From Ruditapes philippinarum (Eukaryota), in the NCBI RefSeq assembly GCF_026571515.1, contig NW_026861124.1, forward strand, positions 62,001 to 126,000: a DNA stretch of 64,000 nucleotides, written 5' to 3'. The notes beneath the pieces were generated by a model. That model made no database searches, was not told where the DNA came from, and was given only the letters and a program-made list of their open reading frames with translations. Of the stretch, positions 1-64,000 are shown piece after piece. Positions within the stretch are counted from its first letter, which is position 1. Every line of letters begins with the position of its first letter. The position numbers were made by a program, and so were the translations under genes.

Positions 1-632
1 AGACCTTTAAGTTAATCAGGCAGACGTTGACCTTCACTCAAAATTGACCTTGACCTTGAAGGTTAGATTATTGAAATTGTCTTATTTTTGCTGTAACTTG
101 TCATAACTTTGTTATTAATGAATAATGGATTGACTTCATATTAAAACACAACATTCTTAAGGATAAGATATGTATGTCAAACTCAAATTGACCTTGGCTC
201 TTTTATAACTTGACTTTGAAGGTTAGAATATTGAATTTTCACTGATTTGAGCTATTATTGACTGTAATTTAGAAATTAATGACTGGATTATCTTCATACT
301 TGGACAAAACAATTTTTTGGACAAGACCTAAATTTTAAATGTTGAACTCACCTTCACCTTAGGCTTTTAATGACTTAATTTGATTCTTTGACATTGAATT
401 TTTGTTAAACTGTCATGATTGGTTATTTATGTACACATTTGATTCATAATTGGACAAAACAAGACTTATTTTCAAACAAACAAATTGAATAATTTGATAT
501 GACTGTTGACCTTTAATTGACCTTGACCATCAAGGTCATAAGAAATTCTCTCTTTGCTTCTCTTACTTGCTATAACTTTGTTATATATATATATATATTA
601 TATGGATTTATATTCAATCAACACATTGAAAA

Positions 633-687
633 ACACATTTTCCTTTACTAATTAGTTTCATGCGCAAAACGCAATCTTCAGAAGTGT
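633..687 (-). ncRNA. Second copy of the hammerhead ribozyme (left arm)
   Basis: Reverse complement of the 3390-3445 motif: cctttactaattagtttcatgcgcaaaacgcaatcttcagaagtg. Confidence 0.75.
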
Positions 688-3389
688 AAATGGTAGTTCT
701 CAATAAAGGGACGTAACTATGAAGTGTAAATGGTGGTTTCTCAATAAAGGGGCGTAAAAACTATATTAATACTGTTCATTTTTTAAAGTTTGCTTAATAG
801 ATATTTCCTGGAATGTCTGCAGGTTGTTACAAGTTCGTTTTCTTTTGTTAAGTTTAGCGTTTTCTTGTTTGCAGATAATGTAGAATTTCTCCCATAGGCA
901 CAAGTTGCATCGGTCGGAGGCTGGGTTGTAGGGTGAGGCTTGTTTTAAGATATTCCATGTTATGTTAAAGTCGATGTTTTCTTCTTTTGAGTTCCCAGAT
1001 ATATTTACTTAATTCAGTGCTGTTTTTTAAGCTTAGGATTTCTAAATGATGCTTTGTGGTTTGTAAATCGGGTTTTAAGGTATTTTCTGTTAATCCTACA
1101 TAAGTTTGTTTAGGCTTGTCGTCGTTTGTTTCCACTGTAGCTCTATATACAACCGATTTTCACAAGCATCGTCTGACATGGGGCAATCTATTATTTTCCT
1201 ACAATTGCATGTTTTAGGCTGATTTTTTACTATTTCTTTGGAAAGAATAGCTTTGTTATGTCCGTCGATTATTATTGTTTTTTATATTGTTCATGCAACT
1301 ATAACTTAATTTGACTGTGTTTCTATTGAATATTTTGTGTAGCAAGTGTTCCTTGGGAAATTCTTCGTCTAGTATTTTCAGAAACGTTTTTCCAATGTTG
1401 GTTTCTACATTTTTTTACTATATGGTGGGTTATACCAGATTATATTTCTGCTTCTGTTTTTGCGATTCTTGGTACCGTTGTCAGTCTTTTTCTTCATTTG
1501 AGTATTTAAGTTGGTGTTTATATCCACTATTTGTAATAGACCTTTGGTAGATTGGTGTTGCTATGTCAAAAGATTCTTGGTCATATGATATTTCGCATAG
1601 ACGTTTGTTAATGCCTATGGGTATGTTCTTTGATGATATTCGGTGGGTGGTTCGATTCGGTATGCACATATAACGGTGTGTTGTTCGGTTTGTTGTATGG
1701 AACATGTTTGCCATTCTTCAGGTTGAGTGTTACGTCCAAAAAGTTCACGATTTTTTTTGTTGGATTCAATTGTAATCTTCAGGCCGTGTTAGAGAAAGAT
1801 AGAGCACAGGTCTTTTTTTAATGTTTTCAATTTCACGTGGTTTCGCATCAGATACACCTAGACCATCATCTCGATATAGCCCAAAGTTTTTTCCATGTTT
1901 CTGTGTTATTTCGTTAAGTAAATATAATCCAACTAACTCACAAGTTTCTGCTCCATCGAAGCTTCCCATAGTTACGTCAAATAGATTGGATGTCGCTTTC
2001 TTGCCCCATGGTTCACCTGACTTGTAAAGGCATGATTGTTTTGCATGTATAATGATTTGTCTTTCCTCAGAACTGATGTCGTGGTATATTGACGCGAAAT
2101 CGAGTGCATTATTTAGCAGTTCGGCTGAAATTGAAGGGTAGAAATCCGCTATGTCGAATGATTTCTTAACGAAATAACACAGAAACATGGAAAAAACTTT
2201 GGGCTATATCGAGATGATGGTCTAGGTGTATCTGATGCGAAACCACGTGAAATTGAAAACATTAAAAAAGACCTGTGCTCTATCTTTTCTAAACACGGCC
2301 TGAAGATTACAATTGAATCCAACAAAAAAATCGTGAACTTTTTGGACGTAACACTCAACCTGAAGAATGGCAAACATGTTCCATACAACAAACCGAACAA
2401 CACACCGTTATATGTGCATACCGAATCGAACCACCCACCGAATATCATCAAGAACATACCCATAGGCATTAACAAACGTCTATGCGAAATATCATGACCA
2501 AGAATCTTTTGACATAGCAACACCAATCTACCAAAGGTCTATTACAATAGTGGATATAAACACCAACTTAAATACTCAAATGAAGAAAAAGACTGACAAC
2601 GGTACCAAGAATCGCAAAAAACAGAAGCAGAAATATAATCTGGTTATAAACCCACCATATAGTAAAATGTAGAACCAACATTGGAAAACGTTTCTGAAAA
2701 TACTAGACGAAGAAAGAATTTCCCAAGGAACACTTGCTACACAAAATATTCAATAGAAACACAGTCAAATTAAAGTTATAGTTGCCCATGAACAATATAA
2801 AAAACATAATCGACGGACATAACAAAGCTATTCTTTCCAAAGAAATAGTAAAAAAATCAGCCTAAAACATGCAATTGTAGGAAATAATAGATTGCCCCAT
2901 GTCAGGCGATGCTTTTGGTGAAATCGTTGTATATAGAGCTACAGTGGAAACAAAACGACGACAAGCCTAAACAAACTTATGTAGGATTAACAGGAAAATA
3001 CCTTTAAAAACCCGATTTACAAACCACAAAGCATCATTTAGAAATCCTAAGCTTAAAAACAGCACTGAATTAAGTAAATATATCTGGGAACTCAAAGAAG
3101 AAAAAACTCGACTTTAACATAACATGGAATATCTTAAAACAAGCCTCACCCTACAACCCAGCCTCCGACCGATGCAACTTGTGCCTATGGGAGAAATTCT
3201 ACATTATCTGCAAACAAGAAAACGCTAAACTTAACAAAAGAAACGAACTTGTAACAACCTGCAGACATTCCAGGAAATATCTATTAAGCAACTTTAAAAA
3301 ATGAACAGTATTAATATAGTTACGCCCCTTTATTGAGAAACCACCATTTACACTTCATAGTTACGTCCCTTTATTGAGAACTACCATTT

Positions 3390-3445
3390 ACACTTCTGAA
3401 GATTGCGTTTTGCGCATGAAACTAATTAGTAAAGGAAAATGTGTT
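3390..3445 (+). ncRNA. Minimal type I hammerhead ribozyme in the Penelope pLTR
   Basis: ctt-CTGAAGA-t(tgcg ttttg cgca)t-GAAAC, palindromic ACTAATTAGT helix III, GTA cleavage triplet at 3429-3431, then aag pairing with ctt. Confidence 0.75.
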
Positions 3446-3541
3446 TTTCAATGTGTTGATTGAATATAAATCCATACATACAGCTCTGGGATACCATCGA
3501 GCACTCTGTCTAGGGTTTGTACTGACTTTTAGTGTTATTGG

Positions 3542-3596
<55 letters not shown>

Positions 3597-4449
3597 AATG
3601 GATTTAATTATTAAACTTCATATTAGGACACAACATCTTTTAGGTCAGGATCTTTATATATATAATTTAAACTCAAATTGACCTTGAAGTTCAAATTATT
3701 AGATTTTCCCTGTTTATAGTGACAATTGTCTGTAACTTGGTAATTAATCAATGTCATACTTGGACAGAAAAAGCTATTGGATAAGACCTTTGAAAAGGTT
3801 GAACTGACCTTGACCTTAAAATGAACATGACCATCAAGGTCAAATTATTAGATTTTTTAAGTTGTCATATTTTCATGAAAGTAAGGATCTGATTCATATA
3901 TGGACAAAACAACACTCGTGACCAAAGGACATGTTGAATAATTTAGATATGACCTTGACCTTTAAATGACATTGACTGTCAAGGTCAGATAATTAAATTT
4001 TGCTTATATTTACTTAACTATTAATTTGTCATTTGATTATTAGAAAATATACTCGGAATTGAATTTGATATTGATTTTTTTTGTGTGAACTTTAGCCAGA
4101 TATGCGTGAAAAGCATTGCAACGCTTTTCATTTTAGGCCATTTTGCACAATCAAAATTATCGTTCTAGATTTTCTGGATGAGGAAAATTAATGATCAGAA
4201 AATTTGCACACAAAATATTGGTCCAGACCTATATCGAATTGTACAAAAATCTTGAAAAAAATATTTCCAGGCCGCTCACACCAAATAACCTCTCAGTTGA
4301 TCAGTGGAGTCCCTTTAAACTGTTATAGTTTTTTGTCCTGAAGTCTGATTATTTAAAGACATATTTAGCTGATGTAATCATGTTTAATAGTTGATTGCAA
4401 TCTATAAAAATATGTCTTTAAATTTTTATATCTGATAAAAACATTTCAG

Positions 4450-4563
4450 TTTTACCCAGAGGACATGTGTGGTGATCATCACATTTACTGTACAAGTGAT
4501 CAATACACAGGATGTGTTTGCCGAATAAGAGTAGCTTCCGGAACACCGTGCGGGCATGCCAGG
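4450..4563 (+). CDS. Exon N1, ADAMTS/ADAM-type Cys-rich (disintegrin-like) segment
   Basis: tttcag|...|gtgcgt, 114 nt, phase 0-0; FYPEDMCGDHHIYCTSDQYTGCVCRIRVASGTPCGHAR. Confidence 0.75.
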
Positions 4564-7500
4564 GTGCGTAACTTTACTACAAACATTGCTATTCATGTAC
4601 ATGACATTTTCCTGATCGATTTTTCTCATTAGATCTANNNNNNNNNNNNNNNNNNNNNNNNNNNNNNNNNNNNNNNNNNNNNNNNNNNNNNNNNNNNNNN
4701 NNNNNNNNNNNNNNNNNNNNNNNNNNNNNNNNNNNNNNNNNNNNNNNNNNNNNNNNNNNNNNNNNGATTACTTGTACAAATTTATATTCTGCTAAGCAGT
4801 ATTGATTATTTTCAAACAGTTTTCTTCCATTAGATCAGGGAAACAATATATGTAAAGTTCTTTTCTATGTTTGCCTTACAAGTTGACAAGATTATTGCTA
4901 TTCTGGGTCCTACAGGCGCTTATTTAATTTTGAAGAAAATATGGAAATTACCAAAATATGACAAATTTTCATGAGCTTCAAGAATTTTAGTCGTTGTCAT
5001 AGTAACCATTTGTATTAAAATCAACTAAAAGCAGAAACATTAGATATTACATTAATACATTGATCTTTTTGTTACAGGTTTGCAGAAAGGGCCAATGCGT
5101 ATTTAATACAGGTAAATTTGTTTTAAATAAATAGAACTATTAAACTCACTTGATTAATTAACTTCGCTTTGAAATTTCTGCAGTACACTACCTTTTTATA
5201 TGGTCTAGATGGATTGTAGAATAGTAAATTATGAAGTCACGGTCAGATTACTAATAAAAGAAACAAATGTTAATTTTCTTCTTTTGTAACAATACATTTC
5301 TTATAGGGGAAAGTAATAATTGCCACATGTCAGAAAATGCTTTGATAGTCCATTTTATTTGATTGACCAGAAGACAAAGATTTTGGTTAATACTCCATCC
5401 CTGACCCTGTATCCCAGGTGCTGTCCCAGGGGTCGTGACCATGGTTTCAATTTACTGGTTCATTAAGATCACAGGTATCAAAATTTTACTTCTTGGATAA
5501 TTGCAGATGTTCCACTTGGTGAAAATTGTGAATGTCACTCACAGTGTATTAGTAATGCAGTATGTGACCCGGATACACTTGTCTGTGTTTGTAATGAATG
5601 TTACTACAACAACAGTGGCAATTGTACTGAAAGTAAGTACATCAATATGATTCATTAAATTTTGGTTGAATTTTATGTCAGCTTAACAAATGATTTCAGC
5701 CGCGTCATGACAAAACCAACATAATGGGTTTGCAACCAGCATGGATCCAGACCAGCCTGCACATCCTCGCAGTCTGATCAGGATCCATGCTGTTCGCCAT
5801 GAGTTTCTCTACTTGTTACCTCGACTTTTCGATAAGAATAAGTAGAGCTATTGTAGTCACCCGAGCGTCGGCCTCGGTGTCGGCGTCTGCATCAGCGTAA
5901 CCACTTATGTTAAAGTTTTTGTAATAGTTTAAATATTTTCAAAGTCCATTGACATATGGCTTTGAAACTTTGCACACTTGTTTACCATCATGACACCAAC
6001 CTGTAGACAGGAGGAGGTAACTCTTTCAAGCATTTGACAGAATTATGCCCCTTTTTCGACTTAGAATTTTTGTTAAAGTTTTTGAAAACTTATTTGTATA
6101 GATACCATGTAGATCAAAAATTCACATGGTATTTATTAATTAATTAATTAATTTATTTATTTCCTTTGGGTTTTAATAAATTAAATAAATGAATGAATAA
6201 GTGAATGAATGAATGAATGAATTTAAATGAATGAAAGAATATGATTAATTGATTGATGGATTGATTGATTGACATAATGAATGAATGAATTTCAGAATAT
6301 AAACCTTACGTTTGCTTCATTTTTCAGAAATCCCAAATGGTGGGGAATGTAGTGAAGATGTTGAGTGTAAAGATCCGAACGCATTATGTATAAACGGAAC
6401 ATGCCAGTGTAAACCATGCTATTATAACAACAATGGCGTATGTGTAAAACGTAAGTTAATATAACACAAATTTACTGATGTGGTTATTTGCATGAGATTT
6501 GATATATATATCACATTCTTATACTGTCACAGGAGACAGGGAAGCTCGACTAATAAAATACTGGACGCAATAAGGAAGACAAAACTATGAAAGAAAAATC
6601 AATATACTTCGTAAAGTAAAGCTAAAAATAATATAAAAACATTTTTGTTAAGCAGTTATAACTCGGTGTTCAGCAGTTATAACTCGGTGTTCCATTGAGT
6701 ACCTTATTATCCGTTTACTCATTCCCAAGCTTAAGGTCTGTAGCTTACCCGTTTTAATACTGCAACAGTATTGCCGCATCAGACGAAAGAAAAGATGTTA
6801 AAAAAGTGGCCTTTAAAGTTTTGGAAGCCAGAAATACTCATAAGCAACGGAAATTAAAATAAGCTTTGAGAAAATTGTTTTTGGTCTGGTCTTGTTATCT
6901 TCGAATAAATGCACTGAAAGTTTAGCTTTCTTTAAACATCTGTGAATTATTTTTCGTATGTACGTACAGAAAGCAATATAGGCGAACAGTGCAATTCAAC
7001 AGCCCAATGTAAAGGTGACCGAACTGCTTGTGACACAGAAAGCAATGTTTGCGTTTGTGAGACAGGCTACTTTATTGACGATGAAGCAAATTGCGTTCCA
7101 GGTATAGCTACAGTTCATTTATTTTTGTTTAGTCTAACATACATGTACAATTAACACTTCTGCGTACAGTCGTATCTCTTATTTGTAAAAAGTGTGATTT
7201 TTTTTTCTTGCTGAATTCAGTTAATTCACAAAAAAGAAGCAAGCTCTAACTGATAAGAAACCATGAATAAAATAATTTTTTTGCACCACTTCAACAAGGA
7301 AATTTCAAAACTGTTTATATTTGTATATAGTTGTACAGTGTAAATTAATTTATTTTTCAGTTGTATTTATTTCATCTTTTATTTTTTTTAGTGAACGGAA
7401 CAATCTGTGACCGGTGCATTCAGCAACCAGATTCATGTACACAAGATGGAACAACCTGTTCTGATAGAGGATTTTGTGAATGTTCTAACAACACAGTGGA

Positions 7501-10500
7501 ATTCAATGGAGAATGCTGTGAGTGTCAAAATTATTGATGTAAAACATTCATCTAGAGTGGAAAAATACAAAAAAAATCAAAGCCTCTTATAGTTCCAAGG
7601 GGGTGTGGGGGGTGTGGGGAGGACTGTGGTTGCAATTGACTTGTACATGTAAATTATAGAGTGCAAGCGGTAAGAACAATGTCTCAAATCCACCAGATTT
7701 ATAGGAAACTTGTAAAGGGAAATTTATTGGGACATTATTGTTGCACCCTTATTGTCAGAATCTTTTAATTTATGCCGCCTGAGAACAAATGAAGATAGGG
7801 TTGATAACATGTTATGTAAGTCATCCATAAGTAAGTTTTAATGTGTAATTGTTGAATTTGTAGATGGTACAAGAGTGGGTGAGAGTTGTACAACAGAGGT
7901 AGATACATGTACAGATTACTACGCAGAATGTAACGGAACTGTATGCGACTGCGTTGAAGGCTTCAGCTGGAATGGAACGATTTGTGGTAATGTTATTTAT
8001 AAGCATATAGCTTTGTATCAATTTGTACAGGCATAAAAATACTAATTAGATATTCTTTTATAATTCTATTTTTAAAATGCTTTTGGATATTTTTTTATAT
8101 TATGTTATACCCCCTGTGGTCCGTCCGGGCGAACGAGAGGACGCTTGTTGGGTACCTCCAACACACGAGAGGACACTTGTTGGGTAATTCTATTCATTCC
8201 ATCAGTATTGTTGGGTACTTATATTCTCTTGTTATGTACCTTTAAACAAAAGAAGTACCCAATAAATGACCATTCATAGGAACGTCCGTCCGTCTGTCTG
8301 TCCGTTAGCAATTTGGTTTCCGGAGCATAACTTAAGTTCCATTTGGCCCACAGTATTCAAACTTCATAGGATGATTGCCCATATTGGGTAGAAGACCCCT
8401 ATTGATTTTGGGGTCACAAGGTCAAAGGTCCAGGTCACTATTACCTTAAAACTGAAAATGGTTTCCGGAGCATAACTTAAGTTCCATTTGGCCCACAGTC
8501 TCCAAACTTCACAGCATAATTGTCCATATTGGTTAGAAGACCCCTATTGATTTGGGGTCACAAGGTCAAAGGTCAAGGTCACTATTACCTTAAAACTGAA
8601 AATGGTTTCCTGAGCATAACTTAAGTTCCATTTGGCCCACAGTATTCAAACTTCATAGGATGATTGTCCATATTGGGTAGAAGACCCCTATTGATTTTGG
8701 GGTCACAATGTGAAAGGTCAAGGTCACTATTACCTTAAAACTGAAAATGGTTTCCGGAGCATAGCTTAAGTTCCATTTGGCCAACAGTATTCAAACTTTA
8801 TAGGATGATTGTCCATATTGGGTAGAAGACCCCTATTGATTTTGGGGTCACAAGGTCAAAGGTCAAGGTCACTATTTCCTTAAAACTGAAAACAGTTTCC
8901 GCTAAATAACTTAAGTATTAATTAACCTACAGTTGTAAAATTTTATAGGATGGACAGCTATGTCCAATACATGACCCCTATGGTTTTTAGGGTCATAAGT
9001 TCAAAGGTCAGGGTCACAATGAGCTTTACACTGAAAGTTGTGGTTTCTTGATCATAACTTCAACTTGATGCTGGTGCTTTGAAAACAGCAACTGTATATA
9101 TATGAAGGTTTTCCAGCTATAAAGGAGGATTGCTTTTTGAAGGAGGTAATACTGCATTTAATTCCCATGTCTTACAAATGTTTCATCCTTACTAACAAAA
9201 TAAAAACACTTTTGGGCATATAATGCTCTGCCTAGCGGTGCTCTTGTTTTTCTTGTGAAAGCATATAGTTGTCAAGCTGCACTACTTTCTACTCTTCCAA
9301 TCAGGATCTGTCACCTTTTCGCCTAGTGCCTTCAAAACTAATCACCGATGCCAATTAGTCAAACTTAATACTTGTATAGTTTAGGTCAAGGCCATAGTGA
9401 TATTTTCTTCTTTTTTTCTCACAAACCATGAATTATGGCATGTCATGCATGTATGTTTACCAGACATTTTTTTTTAAACTATTAAACAGAGGGAAGACGA
9501 CATGGTCTCTCCAAAAAATATCTTCACATTGTCTCAGAGACTCTCTTTGACAAGTTTTAATGGTTGGTCTAAATCTAGTCTTTTTGAAATCTATTATTAA
9601 TAGAATAAAATTTAATAGTAACTGAAATTTCTCTTTAGTTTGATGTTTTTCATTGATATATGTCTCATAACCAGACTCATACATGTATTTGTGCATTATT
9701 TCTCACACAACCTTGTACTGAAATTAAATCATTGACTGTTTGTACCATAAAACTGGATATCTTCCTTTCACATAAACTTAAGTCCCTTTAAAACTCATTC
9801 AACCATTCACTGTTAAGAAACATTATATTTACGCAAATTTTCTTTTGAATCAGTTGGACGCACACTGTGTGACCCATGTGACACGTCCCCATCATCATGT
9901 GATGACGAACTTGTATGCAGCCCTGAAACGTATCGCTGTGAATGTCCTAGTGGCCATGTTCAAGTGGGCGATACCTGCTGTAAGATTTTCTTTGTATCGT
10001 TTAATTCTTCTATTTATATAGTTTTTGCTGATTAAAGCATTATTTTTATAATCTTGTTAAATTGAAGTAATGCTGATAAGTTCTAAATAATCAAATTAAA
10101 AAAAAACAGCAACCCATTGGTTTGTGTGTAGTAGTCATAACAGAAAAAATGTAGAAAAAAATTTATATAAACAAATGTAATAACATCTTTATTTTTAATT
10201 TTTTGTTTGTTTTTGTTATAATACAGTATAACCTCCGAGGAGGGGCCCCTTGTAGACCAATTACCTCTTTATATAAAAGCAATATTATTTCTTCACTAAG
10301 TAAACAATTTTACTATATTTTACTGTAGAGCAACACCTCTATGAGCAGCAACTAAAATATTTGTCTCCCAAAGGGTGTAGGTTTTACTGTTGTGTTTTGT
10401 AAATGAAAAATTTTGATTCTGGAATGTTTTTACTCTTAAATCAGTTTTTAGCGAGTTCCGATTTTCTCAACTTTCACTGAATATGTTAATTTGAAATATT

Positions 10501-13500
10501 TCATTGCAGGTGGCAGATTTGTAACTGAACCTTGCAGTGGTTATACTGTTGTGCTTTGTAAATGAGAAATTTTTTATTCTGTAACGTTTTTACTCTTAAA
10601 TCTTGTACAGTGAAAGTTGAGACAACCGGACATCGAAGGGAAAATCTTGGACTGATAAATCATCCAGTATTTAGAGAGTTACGATTTTCTCAACTTTCAC
10701 TATATATATTAATCTAAAATCTTTCATTGCAGATGGCAGATTTGTTACTGAACCTTGTACAATATCCCTCGATACCTGTGTCGATGACAACGCTGAATGT
10801 AACGGCACTGTGTGTGTCTGTATTGCTAACTTTGTTTGGAACGGATCAATTTGCGGTAAATTTTTTCATTGTTCATTTACTTCTAGATTATTTATAATAA
10901 GAAAAAAGATACTATTTCAAATGGGGTGTTTAATTTCTTAAATTTTAAGCAATCATAACCAACTTTAGGATTATTTCTATATTTTTGAAGAATAAGGAGA
11001 GCTATTGTAATCACCAAGGCATCTGGGTCGACATCACCATCACACTTAATTGGTTAAGTTTTTTGCGTGAAAGTTATTATCTCCAAAAATACTGAATTGA
11101 ATGGGTTGAAACTGCAAACTTTATTTGAGAGCATAATAGAAATTAAAGAAACAAGGTCATTTTTTTAAGGCCCATAACTCAAACTTGGATTTTAAAAGAA
11201 GTATAATTCTACATTATTCAGGCTCTAAAAGTGTTTTGCTATTAAGCACCATGCTGTCCTTCTGATTGCTCTTGTTGTCATTTATAGAAGTGTATATTAA
11301 TGTACTTAAAATTTGAGCCGATATATTTATTATCCATATTTGACCTTCGATGTACCAGTACCAACTCGGTCATATTGACAATTATATTGACTGGTTTACG
11401 TTAATATTAAGTTTTTCACATGTATACAATAAAGTTATGTTATAGTTGGAGACAGCCTGTGTGACCCCTGTGACCCTGCTATTACTACATGTGACTCTTC
11501 ACTAGTATGTAGTTCAGATACTTACAGATGTGAATGTCCCCCAGGATTTGTACAAATAGGAGATGCCTGCTGTAAGTACATTTGTGTACTTTCATTATAG
11601 AAATATTAGAATATGGTTCATCTCTTACTTATACACAATATTTTTCTGATAACATTGTAAAGATTTCACATTTTAGTGAATTTTCTGAACTTTTTTGTTG
11701 AATTTATCAATTGATATATTAGTTTACATATAATGAAAACAAACGTTATCATATTTGACTCGGACCTGTTTCTGCTATTGAGATTGCTATTTGACCTTTA
11801 CAACTATTGAGTTTAGATCATTTACTACTGTAAAATCAGTTTTGTTTTTTTTGAAGCATAATACATATGTTAACTGTGAAATATTATATAATTGAATACA
11901 GTACATTATACAATATAATATAATAAAAAATATAAATGAGCCACGTCACGACACGTCTGCGCAGTCTGATCTGGATCCATGCTGGTCGCAAACCCATTAT
12001 GTTGGTTTTGTCGTGACGTGACTCAAATGTTTGGTATACTTGTAAAGCATAATATCTGATACAGTTTGAAAATAATTCAAAATAAATACCTTAGTCATTT
12101 TCATTTGGGGGTGGGGAGTTCATGTGATCGTCTTATGTTAGTAAATGAACCGTTGGTATGTCCCCACAAAGTGGGAGCATATAGCGTTGCACTTGTCCGT
12201 CCGTCCATCCGTCCGTCCATCTGTACGTCCTGAAATCTTGTGAATGCAACTCCTCTTAAACTGGATGGCAGATTTTGCTTAAACTTTCAGGGATGAACAA
12301 CCTTAATGTGTAGATGGTAGTAAAGGAAGGAATTTTTGCAGCGACCAAATTTAACAGAATTATGGCCCTTTGTTGATTTTTAGCTCGACTATTCGAAGAA
12401 CATGAGAGCTATTGTAGTCGCCCCGGCGTCGGCGTCGGTGTCGGCGTCAGCGTCCGCGTCGGCGTCTGCGTTGGTTAAAGTTTTTTGTAAAGTCAAATAT
12501 CTCAATAATTACTTGAGATATTCAATTGAAACTTACAATACTTATTTATAGTAACAAGGTACATCAGATTGACAAGTTTGATAACTCTGCCTACAATATT
12601 GACAGAATTATGCCCCTTTTTAACTTAGAAATTTTGGTTAAAGTTTTTTGTAAAGTCAAATATCTCAATAATTACTTGAGATATTCAATTGAAACTTACA
12701 ATACTTATTTATAGTAACAAGGTACATCAGATTGACAAGTTTGATAACTCTGCCTACAATATTGACAGAATTATGCCCCTTTTTAACTTAGAAATTTTGG
12801 TTAAAGTTTTTTGTAAAGTCAAATATCTCAATTATTGCTTGAGATATTCAATTGAAACTTACAATACTTATTTAAAGTAACAAGGTACATCAGATTGACA
12901 AGTTGGATAACTCTGCCTACAATATTGACAGAATTATGCCCCTTTGGAACTTAGAAATTTTGGTTAAAGTTTTTTTGTAAAGTCAAATATCTCAATTATT
13001 GCTTGAGATATTCAATTGAAATTTAAAATACTTTTTTATAGTAACAATGTACATCACTTTGCAAAATTGCATAACTCTGCCTGCAAAATTTGAAGAATTA
13101 TTTGCCCCTTTGAAACTTAGAAATTTTGGTTAAAGGTTAAAGGTCTTCAAAGATATTTACTTGAAACTTTACACATGCACTTAGATTCATAATTGGAGGG
13201 TCATAATTGTATGTCACTAACCAAGTTCCATAACTCTATCTTGCATTTAGGCTGATTCATATCCCCTTTTCTACTTAGTCTCTTGGTTAATGTTTACATG
13301 CAAGTTTTACATATCTCAATAACTATTAAAGATATTTATCTAAAACTTCACATATGCATTTAGGGTCATAATTGTAGGTCACTGACAAAGATCCATAATT
13401 CTATCTTGCATTTAGGCTGATTTTTCTCCCCTTTTTCAACTTAGAAATTCATGGTAAAGTTTTGCTTGTAAGCTGTTATCTCAATTACTACTGAAGGGTT

Positions 13501-16500
13501 TGTGCCTTTTTTGGGACAATTTTATGCATTCATAATAATAAAGCAGTGATTTACTTGATAAAACATCTTAATTAGAAGCCTTTGTACCTTTATCAAGCAC
13601 TTAGAATAGTCGAGCGTGCTGTCCTACCGACAGCTCTTGTTTCAATATATACTGTGTAGAAATTTTGTGAACGCAACTCCTCTTAAACCGGATGGCAGAT
13701 TTTGCTTAAACTTCCAGGGATGAACAACCTTAATGTGTAGATGGTAGTAAAGGAAGGAATTTTTGCTGCGACCAAATTTACCAGAATTATGGCCCTTTGT
13801 TGATTTTTTCACTATATACCATATAGAAATTTTGTGAACGCAACTCTTAAACCGGATGGCAGATTTTAATAAAAAGTTCCACATAAAAATCTTACATACA
13901 GATATGCATGCTCTTGTTTACGAGCACATCTGCACAGTGGGGGCATCCGTGTCCTTTGGACACAGTTCTAGTTTAACTTCATCTATTGGCAAGGTCACAG
14001 TGACCTCTTGTCATATCACTGAGAAATAACATAGCTATTGACATGGCGCATAAGTACAATATTCAATTACAGATGGGACCGTTGTTGGTGAATCATGCAC
14101 AACTTTAATTGACACGTGTATTGATGACAATGCTGCATGTAATGGTACTGTGTGTGACTGTTTACCTAATTGGGTATGGAATGGATCTATATGTCGTAAG
14201 TTTTGAGAGTCTTGTCATTCCGTAATGATTTTGCTTAATATGGATATGTCACATGTCGTAAAAGACGCTGAAGCTTGTAAACATTTACAAGCCTTATGTT
14301 GAACAGTATTGCCTCTCCCTTTGATACCAGTGAAGAGCTTAGACAATTCTACATATGTGTCATTTATGACAAGACACTCTACAAGGATTGCTACAATGTA
14401 CCAGATTTAAGTGTTTAGATTAAGGGAAGTGTTGGTCTTGTAGTTATGGTGTTTGACTCTCAAACCAGGGATCATAGGCTTGAACCCTACAATAGCCACA
14501 ACTATGTTTCCTAATATTACACCAGTACTGGTAAGTTTTAGGAAAAGTAGCAGACTTGACAGGTGTTTAAAGATGCTTCAAGCCTGTATCCAAATAAAGT
14601 TAAAAATAAATGTGTTTGAACTTTAATGAATCTTTTTATGCTGCAAGAGACGTTTTCAGATTTACAGCAAGATAATATTTATACACAATAATATATTTTT
14701 GGCTTCTATTAACTCACTCTGAAGATGTTTTGTAAAAACTGAATTGTTACAAATATTAGTAATCTACATACATGTAAACCTGTACCGTAGGCCTAGTGGT
14801 TAAGGTGTCTGCCTTTAGATCAGGAGGCCCCACGGGGAGTGTTTATTTAAGGATAAATGTTCTTTTTTGGAATGGTTCTGAAATGGCCGCTACGTGAGCC
14901 GCGAGGTATTTGAAATGAGTAAGAGTTGAGAGGTATATGGTATGCAAGCGAAAAGTGTCTCTTAAGTCAGAAATGGTTGGCCCTTGCAGTAGGTGTGACA
15001 GTATAATAAACAAGACCTTTTTGTATATGTTAATTGTCAACCTAATATTTTTACAGTTGGACCAGATTTATGTGACCCGTGTGATACATCAACAACATCT
15101 TGTGACTCAGATCTTGTGTGTAACCCGACCACGTACAGATGTGAATGTCCGACTGACGAAGTACAATATGATGATGAATGCTGTAAGAACTTTTAATATC
15201 AGCTTGGTTACTAATGTTACTATCAGCCTTAGTATTTTTACAGTGAAACCCGTGTTTAAAGTCTCCTTTAAGTAAGTATTTTTGTGAGTGGCCTTTGTAA
15301 ACAGGTTTTATTGTATATGACTTATGATGAAGCAATCCTGCTCAATACTATACATGGATATAGTGATTTTTGAATAGAAGTTGCAAACAAAATGTTCCAA
15401 ATCCCATAAAAAGACCAAATTATATCAATTAGAAACAATCAATGCAAAAAACAAATAACTGATATGAGATATTTTGGACAATATATTTGTATAATTTGTA
15501 TAACAGAATATGCATTGGCATATTTTGTTATTTTGTATCTATCTAATTAAACTTTCTGAGAAAAATATTTAATTCTTTCAGACGGGACTCATGTTGGCGA
15601 TTCATGCACAACAAGTTTGAACACGTGTATTGATGATAACGCTGGATGTAACGGGACAATATGTGACTGTTTACCTGGGTTTTATTTCAACGGAACTATC
15701 TGCGGTAATTCATGTTTTTGTATTTTTACTGTTCCAAAAAATTCTTGTCTGTAAAAACTGTCGTCTGCTTAAAGTCAATTGTTCAAAATGGAAGGTCTGT
15801 AATGAAATATTAGATAATTTTGTTGATAATATTTAGTATTATACTTAACAGCAAATCACGAAAGAATTACATATGGATGTTGTCGACAAGTTTTAGACAC
15901 ATAATGCAATATTGATTTTATCAAGATTTAAAATATTTGTGGACAATGTACCAATTGTAGACCAATCCAATTTAATCTTAAGCCATTTTCTCAGAAAAAA
16001 ACAAAACAAAACTTAAGCCTGTAATAATACAGATTGGCATCTGACTCAACCACTTTCTTGAAGCCTTATAATGTGCGTATATTAATAATTTATATATCTG
16101 CACATTAAAGTGATATCTTTTTAAACAAGGAAATAATTAAAAAACATGATCTGCAACACATTATTGAACGAATTGTGCTGTCATGTTAAAACTTTACTTT
16201 TTATACAGTTGGTGAACAACTCTGCGATCCATGTGACCCTGCCTCTTCTACATGCTCGAACACGCTTGTTTGCAGTTCAGATAGGTACAGATGTGAATGT
16301 CCTACAGGCTTTGTACAGATTGGGGATTTGTGTTGTAAGTTTTGATAATTTATTGATAAACAGCCAGATACAGATCTGAGCGAGAGTGTGTCTATAAGCT
16401 TATAGCTACCCATACAATCAAACTAAAATAAATTTTGTATTAAGGCACATTATGCCTCAGAAACAAATCAATTTTTACTTCTTTAGAAAGGGCAACATTT

Positions 16501-19500
16501 TGATTTATGAGGGTTTTTAACCTTTCATGCCCTAGGGACAGCAATGTCTCCCTATTTTTTAGGCATTTGCCATTGGACTTTTGTCGTTTTTAATAAAAAT
16601 AATAAATTATAAAAATATAATTTTAAAATAATAAAAATCTAATAAATAATAATAATTTAAATAAAATGTTTACAGTGACCCCTTTGTGGGAGAAAAGGGA
16701 AAAAGGGATTATGAAGGGGTCACTGGGACAGTTCTATATAATTTTGGATATAATGACATAAATACCCAAAATTTTTTTTGAAAAGCAGGATAGTTCCATT
16801 TTAAGGGTTTAAATTAAAATTTTTGTATAATTTGGGTTAAAATTTAAACTCACCTAAAATTAGTATTTAAAAATTTTTATTATTAAAAAGTAATTTTATT
16901 GATAAATCTTTTGTAAAAAAAATGTTTAATTTCAAATTTTATAATGAGATTTTTTCTGTAGGACATTTAATTTTTTATAAACAAAAAAGTTTACTTTAAA
17001 GGAGTTTAATGGGATTAAAAAAAATTAGATACAAATTCCCCATTTTTTTTACAGATACGTTTCTTCCGGAAAAAGAAATTTAACAAACGAGGTTTTTAAA
17101 ATAACCACCCTTTTAAAAGGGTTTTCCCTTGTTTATTTTTATCGCCAAAAAACCCAGCAATTTGTGTATATGGGGTCTTTTAATTTTTTTATCGGGGAAA
17201 ATGATTAATTTGCGCCATTTTGTGTAAAATTTTAAAAAACAGCCCCAGTGTTAAGGGGTTTTCGCCAATTGGGCAATTTCAAATTTCGTAGATCAAAAGC
17301 GCGTTTGATTCGTCAAAACGCCCCCTGATAGCAAAGAGAAAGTTTAAATAGTGGGAAATCTTCTTGGCGGGGGTGTATTTTAATTTGTTGATGTTGACAC
17401 GCGTTCTTTAAATTTGCGGGTTAAAAAGGGAAATTTGGGTTTTAATTGAGAGGTAAACAAAATTTTTAAAAGAAAATAGCGGGTAAAAAGTATGACGGAA
17501 AATTTAAAACGGGCGAACAAATCGCTGTCCGAAGGCGGGCTTCTTCGCCAAATCGTCCCTAGCCAAACCATGCTCCCCTTTCAAAAGTCGCCCGCTCACG
17601 GTCAAATTTCCGGTTAAAGGGTGAATAAAACAAAGGTCGTTGTCGGAAAAAAAGGGTCGCTAATACAGACCATTTTTATAGTAAATACTGTTTGGCGCAC
17701 CTAACTTGGTCCCTTATGACCCGAAAGTCGTATTAAAGGGTCGCTAACAGTCTTTATTATACCCCAACAATAAATATTAATGGGAGATTTGAATTTAAAA
17801 TTAATTAATAAAATAGTATTTCTTTTGAAAAACCCGGCAAAAAGGTGATAATTTAAATTTCATAACCTCTTTGGAAACCGGGAAAGGTTAAGTAAAAGGT
17901 TTTTTGAGAAAGTTGATTTTCTTCTTACCGAAGAAAAATACCCGGGTGAATTTTTTAATTTTTGGGGCATCAAAATGGGAAAATGTAATTTTGGAATTTA
18001 GAAAATTTTTTCTTGGGTTTTTTTCAGTGGGAGAAATTTGGGAAAAGAAGGAAGTAAAAACCCTTGTTAGATCCCCGTTAGATTTTATTAAGGGAAAAAT
18101 TTTAAAAGGGACCCCTTTTGGGATGTATTGCAGGCTCTCTTGGAAAGGAAACTCATTTTTGGTTTAAAAAAATTTAGTTTAATCTTGTTGTACTTTTCAA
18201 ATTTGACTTATTAGTTAACCAAAAGGGTTTTTTTAAAGTCAACCTGTGTAGAGAACCCCCCCACCTGTATTTTGTTTACAAACCCGTTTTACAGTAAAAA
18301 CCCGTGCAGGAAAAAAACCCTGTATTTTGTTGAAACCAAAATGTAATTTTCGTAACACCTGTGTAGAACAACCACCCTTTGGGAGACTAAAGATTTTGGT
18401 TGTTACTGAGAGGTGTCTGCTCTAGAGAGGTTATATTTATTGTGAAGTGTAAATTTGGGAAAAAACATGGCACTGGTTGTTGTGAAGATGTGATTGTTCT
18501 ACAGAGGGTGGTTATACAGAGGTTTTACTGTATTACCATTTATTTAAACTGAGAGCAATAATTTTTGTCAAATGTAAAATCTTTTCCAGACATAACTCGT
18601 TTAAAGGTCTAATGAAAATAAACCCTATCTATTGGTTGGCATAGTAACATTAAGTATGTACATGTAACAAGGGACAGAATGTACTTACTATTTTTCGGAC
18701 AAAGTCAGTCTGTTATCAGTTTGATTTCCTGTAAAATTAATAAAGAAGGACTGACTATAAAAAGAATTATCACTTGTCATTTTGAAATTACAAACTGAAA
18801 TTGATGAATCTCATTGGTCATTCTAAAATAAAATGTAAAGGACAGTTCTAACTATTTAAGAAAATAGTTCTTACTACCATTCTGAAATAAAATTTTTTTG
18901 GATAGCTTATCATAAAAAGTAAAAATTAATGTTTTTTACTATAAAAAAAAAGTACAGGAAAATTTTTTCTTTAAAAATGAAAGTAAAGGGAAAGAGGAAA
19001 TTGTTCTTTTAGGTTAAAATTTGTAAAAAAGAATTTTAAAAAAAAATTTATGAAGTTTAACGGAAAACAAAATAAAACAAGGGCACCCAAATTTGAAAAA
19101 GTTCTTCTTGTAAAAAAACCCCTAAATTAAATTAAAATGCTTTTTAATTCAATTTTCAATTTTACAAAATGGAAAATTTTTTTTTTAAAAAGTTTCAAGA
19201 AGTCTTATTAGTCTTTTAAGGCAAGAAATTTCTAAAAATTTCTTTTTGTATTTAAAAATTAAAATAAAACTTTTGCATGTTAAAAAAAAGTTACCAAAAT
19301 TTGGCCCCGGGTTTTTTTTTAAAAGATACTTTTTGGGGTTTAAAACTGGTTTTCCGGTAAGCCTTTGTCAAATGGGTTTTTAAAGGGCAAAATTTTAAAA
19401 TTGTCCCCAGGTCCCTTTTGACATGAAACCCACCCTTTAAAGGGTTTCAGCCTTTTTTAAAATCTGTTCATGCATTTTTATCAGGAAATTGTACTTTTGT

Positions 19501-63712: not shown

Positions 63713-64000
63713 GTTAGTATAATACAATGTTTAATCTGTTTTCCAAGTCCTTGATGCCAGTTGATGGTATATGTTTTTATCATTTATCACAGAAGGAATA
63801 TTTCTATGCTCCATTACTACAACAGACTTTTCATAAATGTGAATAAGTATGCAAAACAAGTTTTCACCCCACTCAAAGGTCTGGGTCACACTTGTGGGTT
63901 AGCGCAAAACCCGTGTCCAGAGCTTAACTTGTACATGCATGGAGGAATTGTAATATATCTTGAGTGCAAATATTCTCCATAGTTGTTCTCCATGTTGAGT

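What the first reader, a model, noticed from the sequence alone, without database searches (positions are those of the whole stretch)
4450..5111. ADAMTS/ADAM-type Cys-rich module heads the repeat array: candidate protease on a giant stalk
Seen: two exons missed by the ORF track splice in frame to FYPEDMCGDHHIYCTSDQYTGCVCRIRVASGTPCGHAR|VCRKGQCVFNT and switch from phase 0 to phase 1, feeding directly into the array. Known: the ending C...C...GTxCGxxxxCxxGxCV is typical of the disintegrin-like/Cys-rich module after the M12B (reprolysin) domain in ADAMTS and MIG-17-like proteins, where a thrombospondin-1 repeat usually follows in ADAMTS. Inference: here it is followed by at least 59 EGF/EB-like repeats, an architecture I do not recognise. 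A prodomain and HExxHxxGxxH domain are predicted upstream of the window.
Basis: partly seen in the sequence, partly recalled or inferred. Interest (0 to 1): 0.8.

Follow-up and report, generated by a model that had tools for sequence, protein, structure and literature searches.

The report
Dead ADAMTS-like head on EB stalk
In the Manila clam, two small exons complete an ADAMTS-type disintegrin-like domain that joins a protease-like head, which has lost its zinc-binding active site, to a stalk of more than 60 cysteine-rich EB repeats, so this is an unusual non-enzymatic relative of ADAMTS proteases rather than a protease.

Summary
Exons N1 (4450-4563) and N2 (5078-5111) have AG/GT borders. An RNA-derived contig shows them spliced N1-N2-L1, with about 600 nt of further exons upstream. 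A paralog on another contig and a Mactra homolog conserve them. The assembly gap (4638-4765) lies in the N1-N2 intron and hides no exon.

With the exon just upstream of the window, N1 and N2 form a complete ADAMTS_CR_2 (disintegrin-like) domain: Pfam E=1.7e-11 on the public model XP_060553466.1, and the fold model matches ADAMTS-1/-4/-5/-13. Nine further exons in consistent phase lie 3-26 kb upstream of the window. They encode an M12B-type propeptide, a furin site and a divergent reprolysin-like domain.

The "candidate protease" inference fails. Where HExxHxxGxxHD should be, this gene reads HGLLRFLGAKRD and the paralog reads HLLLHSLEGYND. The Mactra model has no such motif.

No thrombospondin repeat follows. 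The domain runs straight into 66 alternating EB-type exons that reach the contig end.

Best reading: a secreted, furin-processed ADAMTS-related pseudoprotease head on a giant EB stalk. It is known so far only from heterodont clams, and RefSeq labels it "notch-like".

The parts
4450..4563 (+). Exon N1, phase 0 to 0, 38 codons. It is the middle part of the ADAMTS_CR_2 (disintegrin-like) domain, ending ...SGTPCGHAR.
   Evidence: AG/GT borders. RNA contigs start exactly at 4450 and carry 597-673 nt of upstream exons. Paralog 50% identical and Mactra 54% identical. hhalign against true ADAMTS-like proteins gives P=0.0025, collinear with the preceding exon. Lies within the Pfam ADAMTS_CR_2 hit on public model P0001, residues 150-224.
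4638..4765 (.). Assembly gap (N run) inside the N1-N2 intron.
   Evidence: The spliced RNA contig goes from N1 straight to N2, and the paralog's equivalent intron is 190 bp with no exon. The gap does not touch the coding sequence. It was not filled.
5078..5111 (+). Exon N2, 34 nt (11 codons plus 1 base), VCRKGQCVFNT. It is the last part of ADAMTS_CR_2 and shifts the gene into phase 1 for the repeat array.
   Evidence: AG/GT borders. Present as the 29 letters between the two laid pieces of X6 contig record 6, with two synonymous differences. The same micro-exon is in the paralog (ICLKGKCTPKP). Aligns to ...C-x-x-G-Q-C-V of a true ADAMTS-like protein.
5507..5632 (+). Exon L1, the first EB module, entered in phase 1.
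   Evidence: Pfam EB E=0.0015. RNA contigs join N2 to L1 at 5504/5507 and L1 to L2 at 5632 to 6328.
6328..6450 (+). Exon L2, the second EB module.
   Evidence: Pfam EB E=1.9e-6, over the cut-off. RNA contigs X1 record 3 and X6 record 7.
6970..7099 (+). Exon L3, the third EB-like module.
   Evidence: RNA contig X6 record 7 joins 6450 to 6970. Present in public model P0001.
7390..64000 (+). Array of alternating A-type (DGT.VGE.CT...C.DDNA.CNGT.C.C) and B-type (LCDPCDP...C...YRCECP...CC) Cys-rich exons. It continues to the contig end, 8.3 kb beyond the window.
   Evidence: 66 exons counted, 32 A, 30 B and 4 EB-like. Junctions 7099 to 7390, and 7517 to 7864-7986, are seen in RNA contigs. Pfam EB in 11 stretches of P0001.
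601..3476 (.). Near-perfect 2.9-kb palindrome (arms about 1.4 kb) inserted in the 5.2-kb intron between the upstream exon e9 and N1. It is not part of the protein.
   Evidence: Inverted-repeat pairs 97-100% complementary. No Pfam hit on its ORFs.

Best explanation
N1 and N2 are real, expressed coding exons of a very large gene of the Manila clam (Ruditapes philippinarum; contig 134,324 bp; partial RefSeq model XP_060553466.1). Together with exon e9, 756-921 bp upstream of the window, they encode one complete ADAMTS-type disintegrin-like domain (Pfam ADAMTS_CR_2).

Upstream of that, spread over 25 kb, lie exons for an M12B-type propeptide, a conserved furin site (RIRR) and a strongly diverged reprolysin-like domain. 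That domain keeps the Met-turn region and the C-terminal helix. It has lost the catalytic Glu and two of the three zinc-binding His. Downstream, the disintegrin-like domain is spliced directly, with no thrombospondin repeat, to three EB modules and then more than 60 alternating EB-type modules.

Inferred mechanism:
- The protein is secreted and the prodomain is removed by a furin-type convertase.
- The mature protein displays a non-catalytic metalloprotease-like plus disintegrin-like head at the tip of a long, disulfide-rich rod.
- The head acts as a binding module for a ligand, substrate or inhibitor, as in the inactive ADAMs, not as an enzyme.

Shown: exon structure, splicing, domain identity of the disintegrin-like module, and loss of the zinc motif. 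Inferred: secretion, furin processing and a binding role.
For: Splicing: a spliced RNA contig covers [597 nt upstream]-N1-N2-L1.

Exon model: all 13 head exons have AG/GT borders and mutually consistent phases.

Conservation:
- The exons are collinear with a paralog on C11357.
- They are collinear with Mactra KAL4231509.1, which carries a signal peptide and an RYRR site.

Exon-by-exon Pfam:
- Pep_M12B_propep: E=0.0016 here, 0.027 in the paralog, 0.16 in Mactra.
- Reprolysin_2, C-terminal positions 150-193 of 195: E=0.03.
- ADAMTS_CR_2, positions 1-26: E=1.2e-4 here, 4e-4 in the paralog.

Disintegrin-like domain:
- ADAMTS_CR_2 is full length on the head of the public model, E=1.7e-11, 44.8 bits against a cut-off of 27.3.
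- BLASTP against a true ADAMTS-like protein gives 34% identity over the whole domain, E=8e-8.
- hhalign per exon places eC6, e9 and N1 on consecutive template columns 444-501, 489-550 and 549-581, with P=0.007, 2.5e-6 and 0.0025.
- The AlphaFold model of the disintegrin-like part has pLDDT 79-91.
- Top Foldseek PDB hits are ADAMTS-1, -13, -4 and -5 and P-III snake venom metalloproteinases. ADAMTS13 matches at 2.8 A over 81 columns with 31% identity.

Zinc motif:
- Exon eC5 ends ..IAHGLLR plus TT, and eC6 starts with T then LGAKRD.
- The public model reads the same.
- hhalign puts LGAKRD on LGxxHD.
- The paralog is degenerate at the same place.

For the Mactra catalytic-like region, all ESM-Atlas neighbours are Reprolysin, ADAM or ADAMTS clusters (a lead only).
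Against: - The N-terminal two thirds of the catalytic-like domain (exons eC1-eC5) give no significant hit by Pfam, hhalign or pairwise alignment. Calling it M12B rests on its position, the flanking domains, the motif alignment by eye and the Atlas lead.
- The e9-to-N1 junction was not seen directly in reads. It rests on phase, the public model, conservation, and the length of sequence upstream of N1 in the RNA contigs.
- The RNA runs that gave the contigs are only guessed to be RNA, although intron-less joins argue for cDNA.
- One propeptide exon and the signal-peptide exon were not found in this gene.
- The fold model used true ADAMTS sequences in its alignment, so that test is partly circular.
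- Nothing was tested for function, localisation or processing.
- The 3' end of the gene lies beyond the contig.
Confidence: 0.75

Rival explanations
1. It is an active ADAMTS-like metalloprotease on a stalk. The zinc site would be supplied by an unannotated alternative exon or by a non-canonical ligand set.
For: The propeptide, furin site, Met-turn (YLM/FLM) and disintegrin-like exosite domain are all retained. The first His and the Gly and Asp of the motif are kept in this gene.
Against: Both paralogs lack the catalytic Glu, and each lacks one or two zinc-binding His, at an exon junction conserved in position and phase. The public model reads the same. The Mactra model has no HExxH at all. 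No HExxH-bearing open frame was found anywhere in the 62 kb upstream. No metzincin is known to work without HExxH (established knowledge).
Confidence: 0.05
2. The head is a decaying relic. An ADAMTS-like gene fused to, or was read through into, an EB-array gene. The head exons are still spliced in but have no function of their own; they only provide a signal peptide and secretion.
For: The catalytic-like domain is very divergent. The Mactra model lacks the equivalents of exons eC3-eC5. Introns are long and hold transposon-like insertions.
Against: All 13 exons keep open frames, splice sites and phases in two paralogs that are only 40-59% identical, which means long independent maintenance. The furin site, all Cys of the disintegrin-like domain and the extra ninth Cys are conserved as far as Mactra. 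Variants seen in N1 and N2 are all synonymous.
Confidence: 0.12
3. N1 and N2 are not ADAMTS-related but just another EB/EGF-like Cys-rich unit at the start of the array. The GTxCG...CxxGxCV motif would be a chance resemblance.
For: N1 alone gives no ADAM or ADAMTS Pfam hit; the best is ragweed allergen at E=0.24. ADAM_CR finds nothing on this contig. A whole-protein Pfam scan of P0001 lists only EB.
Against: With the preceding exon, the domain matches ADAMTS_CR_2 end to end at E=1.7e-11. BLASTP and hhalign against true ADAMTS-like proteins run through N1 and N2. Foldseek returns ADAMTS disintegrin-like domains.
Confidence: 0.03
4. The link is an artefact: two neighbouring genes (an ADAMTS-like pseudogene and an EB-array gene) wrongly joined by a gene predictor or by a misassembly at the gap or palindrome.
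For: There is an assembly gap in the N1-N2 intron and a 2.9-kb perfect palindrome in the e9-N1 intron. The RefSeq model is partial.
Against: An RNA contig crosses N1-N2-L1 and extends about 600 nt upstream. The same head-plus-array order occurs on an independent contig without these gaps. It also occurs in Mactra on a 46-Mb scaffold.
Confidence: 0.05

Closest known systems
TSR-less ADAMTS relatives: C. elegans MIG-17 and arthropod 'ADAMTS like' proteins (e.g. XP_072948350.1)
   Same: Propeptide, then reprolysin-type domain, then ADAMTS_CR_2 disintegrin-like domain, with no thrombospondin repeat. These are the best sequence matches to the module.
   Different: Those proteins keep HELGHxxGxxHD and end soon after the disintegrin-like domain; by my recollection MIG-17 carries a PLAC domain there. 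This clam protein has a degenerate zinc site and continues into more than 60 EB modules.
Canonical ADAMTS proteases (ADAMTS-1, -4, -5, -13)
   Same: The fold of the disintegrin-like domain and its position directly after the catalytic domain. They are the top structural matches.
   Different: ADAMTS proteins have a central TSR, a Cys-rich domain and a spacer after this domain, and an intact zinc site. Here there is no TSR motif on the contig and the active site is dead.
Catalytically inactive ADAMs (ADAM11, ADAM22, ADAM23)
   Same: M12B proteins that lost the zinc motif yet are conserved. By established knowledge they act as non-proteolytic receptors or binding proteins (LGI1-ADAM22), and in them the Cys-rich region is followed by an EGF-like domain. 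ADAM22 structures appear among the weaker fold hits.
   Different: Those are type I membrane ADAMs with a true Disintegrin plus ADAM_CR pair. Pfam ADAM_CR finds nothing on this contig. They have one EGF module, not a giant EB array.
ADAMTS-like proteins (ADAMTSL, papilin)
   Same: Non-enzymatic members of the ADAMTS superfamily that act in the extracellular matrix (established knowledge).
   Different: ADAMTSL proteins lack the propeptide, catalytic and disintegrin-like parts and keep the TSR and spacer ancillary region. The clam protein is the converse: it keeps the head and replaces the ancillary region.
EB-module repeat proteins of nematodes and molluscs, commonly auto-named 'notch-like' or 'MEGF-like'
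   Same: Long arrays of single-exon, phase-1 EB modules (Pfam PF01683). RefSeq names this gene 'neurogenic locus notch homolog protein 1-like'.
   Different: In my searches I found no described EB-array protein with an M12B/ADAMTS head. A paper search for 'ADAMTS' together with 'EB module' found nothing.

Membership tests
ADAMTS_CR_2 / ADAMTS disintegrin-like domain (Pfam PF17771) | Profile match over the curated cut-off across the full domain | tested here: met
   44.8 bits against a cut-off of 27.3, E=1.7e-11, profile 1-69/69 on residues 150-224 of the head of public model P0001. The first exon alone scores 22.8 bits, and the paralog's 21.2 bits. N1 alone gives no hit.
ADAMTS_CR_2 / ADAMTS disintegrin-like domain (Pfam PF17771) | Eight conserved Cys and the LPG...QC...G..CG....C..G.C pattern | tested here: met
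   BLASTP alignment to XP_072948350.1 matches all eight Cys. The clam family has one extra Cys (the CVC in N1), conserved in the paralog and in Mactra.
ADAMTS_CR_2 / ADAMTS disintegrin-like domain (Pfam PF17771) | Fold like solved ADAMTS disintegrin-like domains | tested here: met
   This part of the AlphaFold model has pLDDT 79-91. Foldseek top hits are ADAMTS-1, -13, -4 and -5; 3ghn matches at 2.8 A over 81 columns with 31% identity. Caveat: true ADAMTS sequences were in the input alignment.
M12B (reprolysin/adamalysin) metalloprotease, active enzyme | Zinc-binding consensus HExxHxxGxxHD | tested here: not met
   This gene reads HGLLRFLGAKRD across the eC5/eC6 junction. The paralog reads HLLLHSLEGYND. 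There is none in Mactra, and no HExxHxxGxxH open frame in the 62 kb upstream.
M12B (reprolysin/adamalysin) metalloprotease, active enzyme | Met-turn and C-terminal helix of the catalytic domain | tested here: met
   hhalign of exon eC6 aligns C...YLM...W.LS.CT to C...g.iM...f.wS.CS, P=0.007. Pfam Reprolysin_2 positions 150-193 of 195, E=0.03. A BLASTP alignment segment covers the domain end.
M12B (reprolysin/adamalysin) metalloprotease, active enzyme | Profile match to the whole catalytic domain | tested here: inconclusive
   No Reprolysin family hit on exons eC1-eC5 or on residues 1-149 of P0001. hhalign and Smith-Waterman are not significant. Six of twelve best local alignments of eC5 nevertheless fall on the active-site segment. 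Atlas neighbours are all Reprolysin.
M12B propeptide (Pfam PF01562) | Profile match and a furin site before the catalytic domain | tested here: inconclusive
   Below cut-off but repeated at homologous exons: E=0.0016 here, 0.027 in the paralog, 0.16 in Mactra. RIRR, RTRR and RYRR are conserved directly before the catalytic-like domain. No classical cysteine-switch motif was seen.
ADAMTS family in the strict sense | At least one thrombospondin type 1 repeat after the disintegrin-like domain | tested here: not met
   N2 is spliced directly to an EB module. No WxxWxxW or CSxTCGxG motif occurs in any + frame from the window to the contig end. Pfam on P0001 and P0007 shows EB only. The 3' end of the gene is beyond the contig, so a distal TSR cannot be excluded.
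ADAM family | Disintegrin (PF00200) plus ADAM_CR (PF08516) after the catalytic domain | tested here: not met
   A genome-wide ADAM_CR scan hits two other contigs, not C9611 or C11357. Pfam on the head gives ADAMTS_CR_2 and Adt-1-like only. PF00200 was not searched separately.
EB module (Pfam PF01683) | Profile match over cut-off for the modules after N2 | tested here: met
   L2 scores 28.3 bits against a cut-off of 24.3, and L1 scores 19 bits. P0001 scores 76.4 bits in 11 stretches.

The most novel reading that the evidence does not exclude
Heterodont clams carry a small, conserved family: at least two paralogs in Ruditapes, at least one gene in Mactra, and fragments in other samples. Its members are giant secreted ADAMTS-derived pseudoproteases. 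A furin-processed but zinc-less metalloprotease-like plus disintegrin-like head is held at the tip of a stalk of more than 60 EB modules. The head would work as a non-proteolytic recognition, adhesion or protease/inhibitor-decoy device. This domain architecture has not been described for the M12B clan.
Probability: 0.5. Interest if true: 0.65.

Novelty: new variant of a known kind. Interest (0 to 1): 0.55.

Why it matters
- It adds a new architecture to the ADAMTS/M12B superfamily. The head is kept and inactivated while the usual TSR/spacer ancillary region is replaced by a huge EB array. This is the converse of the ADAMTSL proteins.
- It gives a natural case for asking what a metalloprotease-like plus disintegrin-like head does when it cannot cut.
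- It corrects public annotation. XP_060553466.1 is named 'notch homolog 1-like, partial' and starts inside the catalytic-like domain.
- Whole-protein Pfam scans hide the ADAMTS_CR_2 domain behind the Cys-rich repeats (against 44). Similar heads may therefore be overlooked in other 'EGF/EB repeat' giants of molluscs.

Tried and rejected
- Pfam on N1 alone gave nothing relevant.
- A genome scan with ADAM_CR found no hit on this contig.
- Regex for HExxHxxGxxH and for Cys-rich frames in the 62 kb upstream found nothing. This first suggested that there was no protease. The exons only emerged from the paralog-against-paralog tblastn.
- Whole-protein Pfam on P0001 and P0007 listed only EB. I take this to be masking by the repeat-rich composition, because the head alone scores well.
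- phmmer of Mactra P0007 against PDB sequences found nothing.
- A word search with the Mactra head found only itself.
- Smith-Waterman with shuffles on the catalytic-like part and on exon eC5 was not significant.
- hhalign of exons eP1-eC5 was not significant.
- A sensitive tblastn for the missing propeptide exon and the signal-peptide exon in this gene did not find them. The same run did reveal exon eC3b.
- Pfam on the ORFs of the intronic palindrome gave no hit.
- Paper searches ('ADAMTS' with 'EB module'; with 'bivalve' and 'catalytically inactive'; with 'pseudoprotease'; with 'molluscs') found nothing on such a protein.
Searches of my own model were exon by exon. The only joined sequence used was an unbroken part (residues 1-227) of the public RefSeq protein that one search returned, typed unchanged.
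- The assembly gap was not filled or looked up.
Full report
SOURCE. The window is G000:C9611:62001-126000 (+) of a 1.4-Gb, 15,874-contig assembly. A public protein encoded on a contig of the same length (134,324 bp) is XP_060553466.1 of Ruditapes philippinarum, the Manila clam.

OBSERVATION.
- N1 (4450-4563) is flanked by AG and GTGCGT and reads in phase 0 as a 38-residue Cys-rich peptide.
- N2 (5078-5111) is flanked by AG and GTAAAT and gives 11 codons plus one base.
- L1 (5507-5632) starts with two bases that complete that codon. From here every array exon is in phase 1.
- The assembly gap 4638-4765 lies in the N1-N2 intron. I did not fill it.

RNA evidence comes from my single read-laying run (771 letters).
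- A Logan contig of run X6 (record 6, 811 nt) aligns to 4450-4565, has 29 further letters, then aligns to 5504-5572.
- Those letters, plus the shared GT and CAG, are N2 with two synonymous changes. N1-N2-L1 are therefore contiguous in a spliced molecule, and the gap hides no exon.
- The contig carries 597 nt, and X1 record 1 carries 673 nt, upstream of 4450. N1 is therefore an internal exon.
- Other contigs join L1 to 6328-6450, then 6970-7099, 7390-7517 and 7864-7986.
- These runs are only guessed to be RNA. The intron-less joins argue for cDNA. The raw RNA-seq runs gave depth of only about 1-2 here.

The exons are not a chance open frame.
- A six-frame search of the genome finds one other copy of N1, on C11357 (50% identity).
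- That copy has the same N1|N2 boundary, a 190-bp gap-free intron and the same micro-exon.
- The same array of EB, A-type and B-type exons follows it.

UPSTREAM OF THE WINDOW. I fetched the 62 kb of contig before the window. Simple motif scans found nothing. A tblastn of all + frames against the paralog's upstream region gave a collinear series of conserved blocks. One more block came from a sensitive rerun.

With splice sites checked, all exons have AG/GT borders and compatible phases. Contig coordinates (window coordinate = contig minus 62,000):

| Exon | Contig coordinates |
|---|---|
| eP1 | 36373-36593 |
| eP2 | 37730-37807 |
| eC1 | 39960-40053 |
| eC2 | 40615-40693 |
| eC3 | 41358-41462 |
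| eC3b | 52628-52767 |
| eC4 | 54009-54058 |
| eC5 | 57156-57267 |
| eC6 | 59355-59513 |
| e9 | 61079-61244 |
| N1 | 66450-66563 |
| N2 | 67078-67111 |
| L1 | 67507-67632 |

- A phase mismatch between eP2 and eC1 implies one more propeptide exon. The paralog has it at C11357:13342-13512, but I did not find it in this gene.
- I did not find the signal-peptide exon either.
- The 5.2-kb intron between e9 and N1 holds a 2.9-kb near-perfect palindrome at window 601-3476.

WHAT THE EXONS ENCODE.
- Pfam gave Pep_M12B_propep on eP1 (E=0.0016).
- It gave the C-terminal end of Reprolysin_2 on eC6 (E=0.03, positions 150-193 of 195).
- It gave positions 1-26 of ADAMTS_CR_2 on e9 (E=1.2e-4).
- The paralog's exons repeat the first and third hits.

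A profile of the two e9 peptides was searched against 1.84 billion proteins and found only 13 hits. The informative ones:
- The RefSeq model of this very gene (P0001, 769 aa, named 'neurogenic locus notch homolog protein 1-like, partial').
- A Mactra antiquata protein (P0007 = KAL4231509.1, 861 aa).
- A true butterfly ADAMTS-like protein (P0004).
- Short single-exon fragments.

P0001 independently joins eC4-eC5-eC6-e9-N1-N2-L1-L2... exactly as my phases require. Its start codon lies inside exon eC3b, so the model is truncated at the 5' end.

Whole-protein Pfam scans of P0001 list only EB. An unbroken part of that stored protein (residues 1-227, the head) gives ADAMTS_CR_2 at 44.8 bits (cut-off 27.3), E=1.7e-11, profile 1-69/69 on residues 150-224. 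The domain therefore begins in e9 and ends in N2, and N1 and N2 supply about its last two thirds.

Independent checks of this domain:
- BLASTP of P0001 against P0004 aligns the whole domain (34% identity, E=8e-8), ending ...GTPCGHARVCRKGQCV over ...GSSCGQGKYCIAGQCV.
- hhalign of each exon pair against six true ADAMTS-like proteins puts eC6, e9 and N1 on consecutive template columns 444-501, 489-550 and 549-581, with P=0.007, 2.5e-6 and 0.0025.
- An AlphaFold model of the head is confident only in this domain (pLDDT 79-91).
- Its best PDB matches are ADAMTS-1, ADAMTS-13, ADAMTS-4, ADAMTS-5 and P-III snake venom metalloproteinases.
- Caveat: true ADAMTS sequences were in the alignment given to AlphaFold.

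THE PROTEASE QUESTION.
- Exon eC5 ends ...GVSIQIAHGLLR plus TT. Exon eC6 starts with T and then reads LGAKRDKDNSC...YLM. The public model reads the same.
- True relatives read ...GFSGIIVAAHELGHLLGxxHDG...C...IM at this place. hhalign places LGAKRD on LGxxHD.
- Against H-E-x-x-H-x-x-G-x-x-H-D, the clam gene has H-G-L-L-R-F-L-G-A-K-R-D. The catalytic Glu is Gly, and the second and third zinc-binding His are Arg.
- The paralog, with the exon junction at the same place and phase, has H-L-L-L-H-S-L-E-G-Y-N-D.
- The Mactra model has no such motif and lacks the equivalents of eC3-eC5. This may partly be a gene-model defect.
- The Met-turn and the C-terminal helix are kept, as is a furin site directly before the domain (RIRR, RTRR, RYRR).
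- The N-terminal part of the domain (eC1-eC5) is too diverged for a significant sequence match.
- Six of twelve best local alignments of eC5 fall on the active-site segment of true enzymes.
- All ESM-Atlas neighbours of Mactra residues 200-455, by features and by structure, are Reprolysin, ADAM or ADAMTS clusters (a lead only).

I conclude, at about 85%, that this is an M12B-derived domain that cannot bind the catalytic zinc. It is a pseudoprotease.

DOWNSTREAM.
- N2 is followed with no thrombospondin repeat by three EB modules. Then come alternating A-type and B-type six-to-eight-Cys exons.
- I count 66 such exons up to the contig end, where the array is still running.
- No TSR-like motif occurs in any + frame.
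- Only two copies of the head exist in this genome.
- Fragments P0002 and P0003 look like orthologs of the two paralogs in another sample, so the duplication is probably older than the species.

HOW IT PROBABLY WORKS (inference). The protein is secreted; a signal peptide is seen in Mactra. It is processed at the furin site. The mature protein carries a non-catalytic metalloprotease-like plus disintegrin-like head on a long disulfide-rich rod. The head would bind something, whether a ligand, a former substrate or an inhibitor, as the inactive ADAMs 11, 22 and 23 do. The N1/N2 module is the structural joint between head and stalk. An extra ninth Cys (the CVC in N1) is conserved in all three proteins and may pair outside the domain.

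COMPARISON AND NOVELTY.
- The closest relatives by sequence are the TSR-less ADAMTS-like proteins (MIG-17 type, arthropod 'ADAMTS like'), but those are active and short.
- By logic it resembles the inactive ADAMs.
- It is the converse of ADAMTSL and papilin.
- It fails two defining features of ADAMTS enzymes, the zinc motif and the TSR. It should therefore be called ADAMTS-related, not an ADAMTS.
- I found no paper describing an M12B head on an EB array.
- The gene is in RefSeq, but truncated and named after Notch.
- I rate it a new variant of a known kind, of moderate interest.

RIVALS.
- Active protease, 5%. This is contradicted by both paralogs and by the lack of any HExxH frame.
- Functionless relic head, 12%. 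This is argued against by intact frames, splice sites, Cys pattern and furin site across paralogs only 40-59% identical, and across to Mactra.
- Chance Cys motif, 3%.
- Artefactual fusion, 5%. This is contradicted by the RNA contig and by two independent loci.

EARLIER SCAN NOTES. One note (s1-810603) concerns a 27-bp minisatellite at 30890-31985 in the same array. I saw the corresponding open frame running on from an A-type exon but did not pursue it. A word search of the scan's notes found nothing on ADAMTS.

Noticed in passing
window 601-3476: A 2.9-kb near-perfect palindrome: arms about 1.4 kb, 97-100% complementary, centre near 2040. It sits in the intron between upstream exon e9 and N1. 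Its ORFs give no Pfam hit. It could be a foldback or head-to-head transposon insertion, or an assembly artefact.
   Followed up: partly
window 4046-4320: An interspersed repeat just upstream of N1, 70-77% identical to very many places in the genome (1,947 first-look candidates, 40 scored). Probably a SINE- or MITE-like element.
   Followed up: no
window 5690-6100 and 6520-6610: Intronic repeats between L1 and L2, and after L2, attract thousands of RNA reads and contigs from elsewhere in the genome, with many strand-switch joints. The first belongs to a very common element that translates as ...DQHGSRPACASAQSDQDPCC... on many contigs.
   Followed up: no
public model XP_060553466.1 (P0001), contig 52,7xx: The RefSeq model of this gene starts at an internal ATG inside catalytic-like exon eC3b, skips most array exons, and is named 'neurogenic locus notch homolog protein 1-like, partial'. 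Whole-protein Pfam scans show only EB, although the head alone scores 44.8 bits for ADAMTS_CR_2.
   Followed up: yes
window 30772-31985: An A-type exon's open frame runs on into a long run of 9-residue units (…SGSHCGKSM…).
   Followed up: no
window 21190-21437: A second assembly gap (248 N) inside the array. The A/B alternation has two A-type exons in a row around it (20185-20346 and 21782-21940), so a B-type exon may lie in the unread stretch. It was not filled.
   Followed up: no
G000:C11357:11242-43800: A paralogous gene with the same head (propeptide, furin site, degenerate zinc motif HLLLHSLEGYND, disintegrin-like domain) and the same EB and A/B array. It has much shorter introns and no gaps, so it is a better template for modelling the family.
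   Followed up: partly
N1, window 4513-4521 (the CVC in the peptide): The disintegrin-like domain has nine Cys rather than the canonical eight. The extra one is conserved in the paralog and in Mactra, which suggests a disulfide to another domain or an intermolecular link.
   Followed up: no
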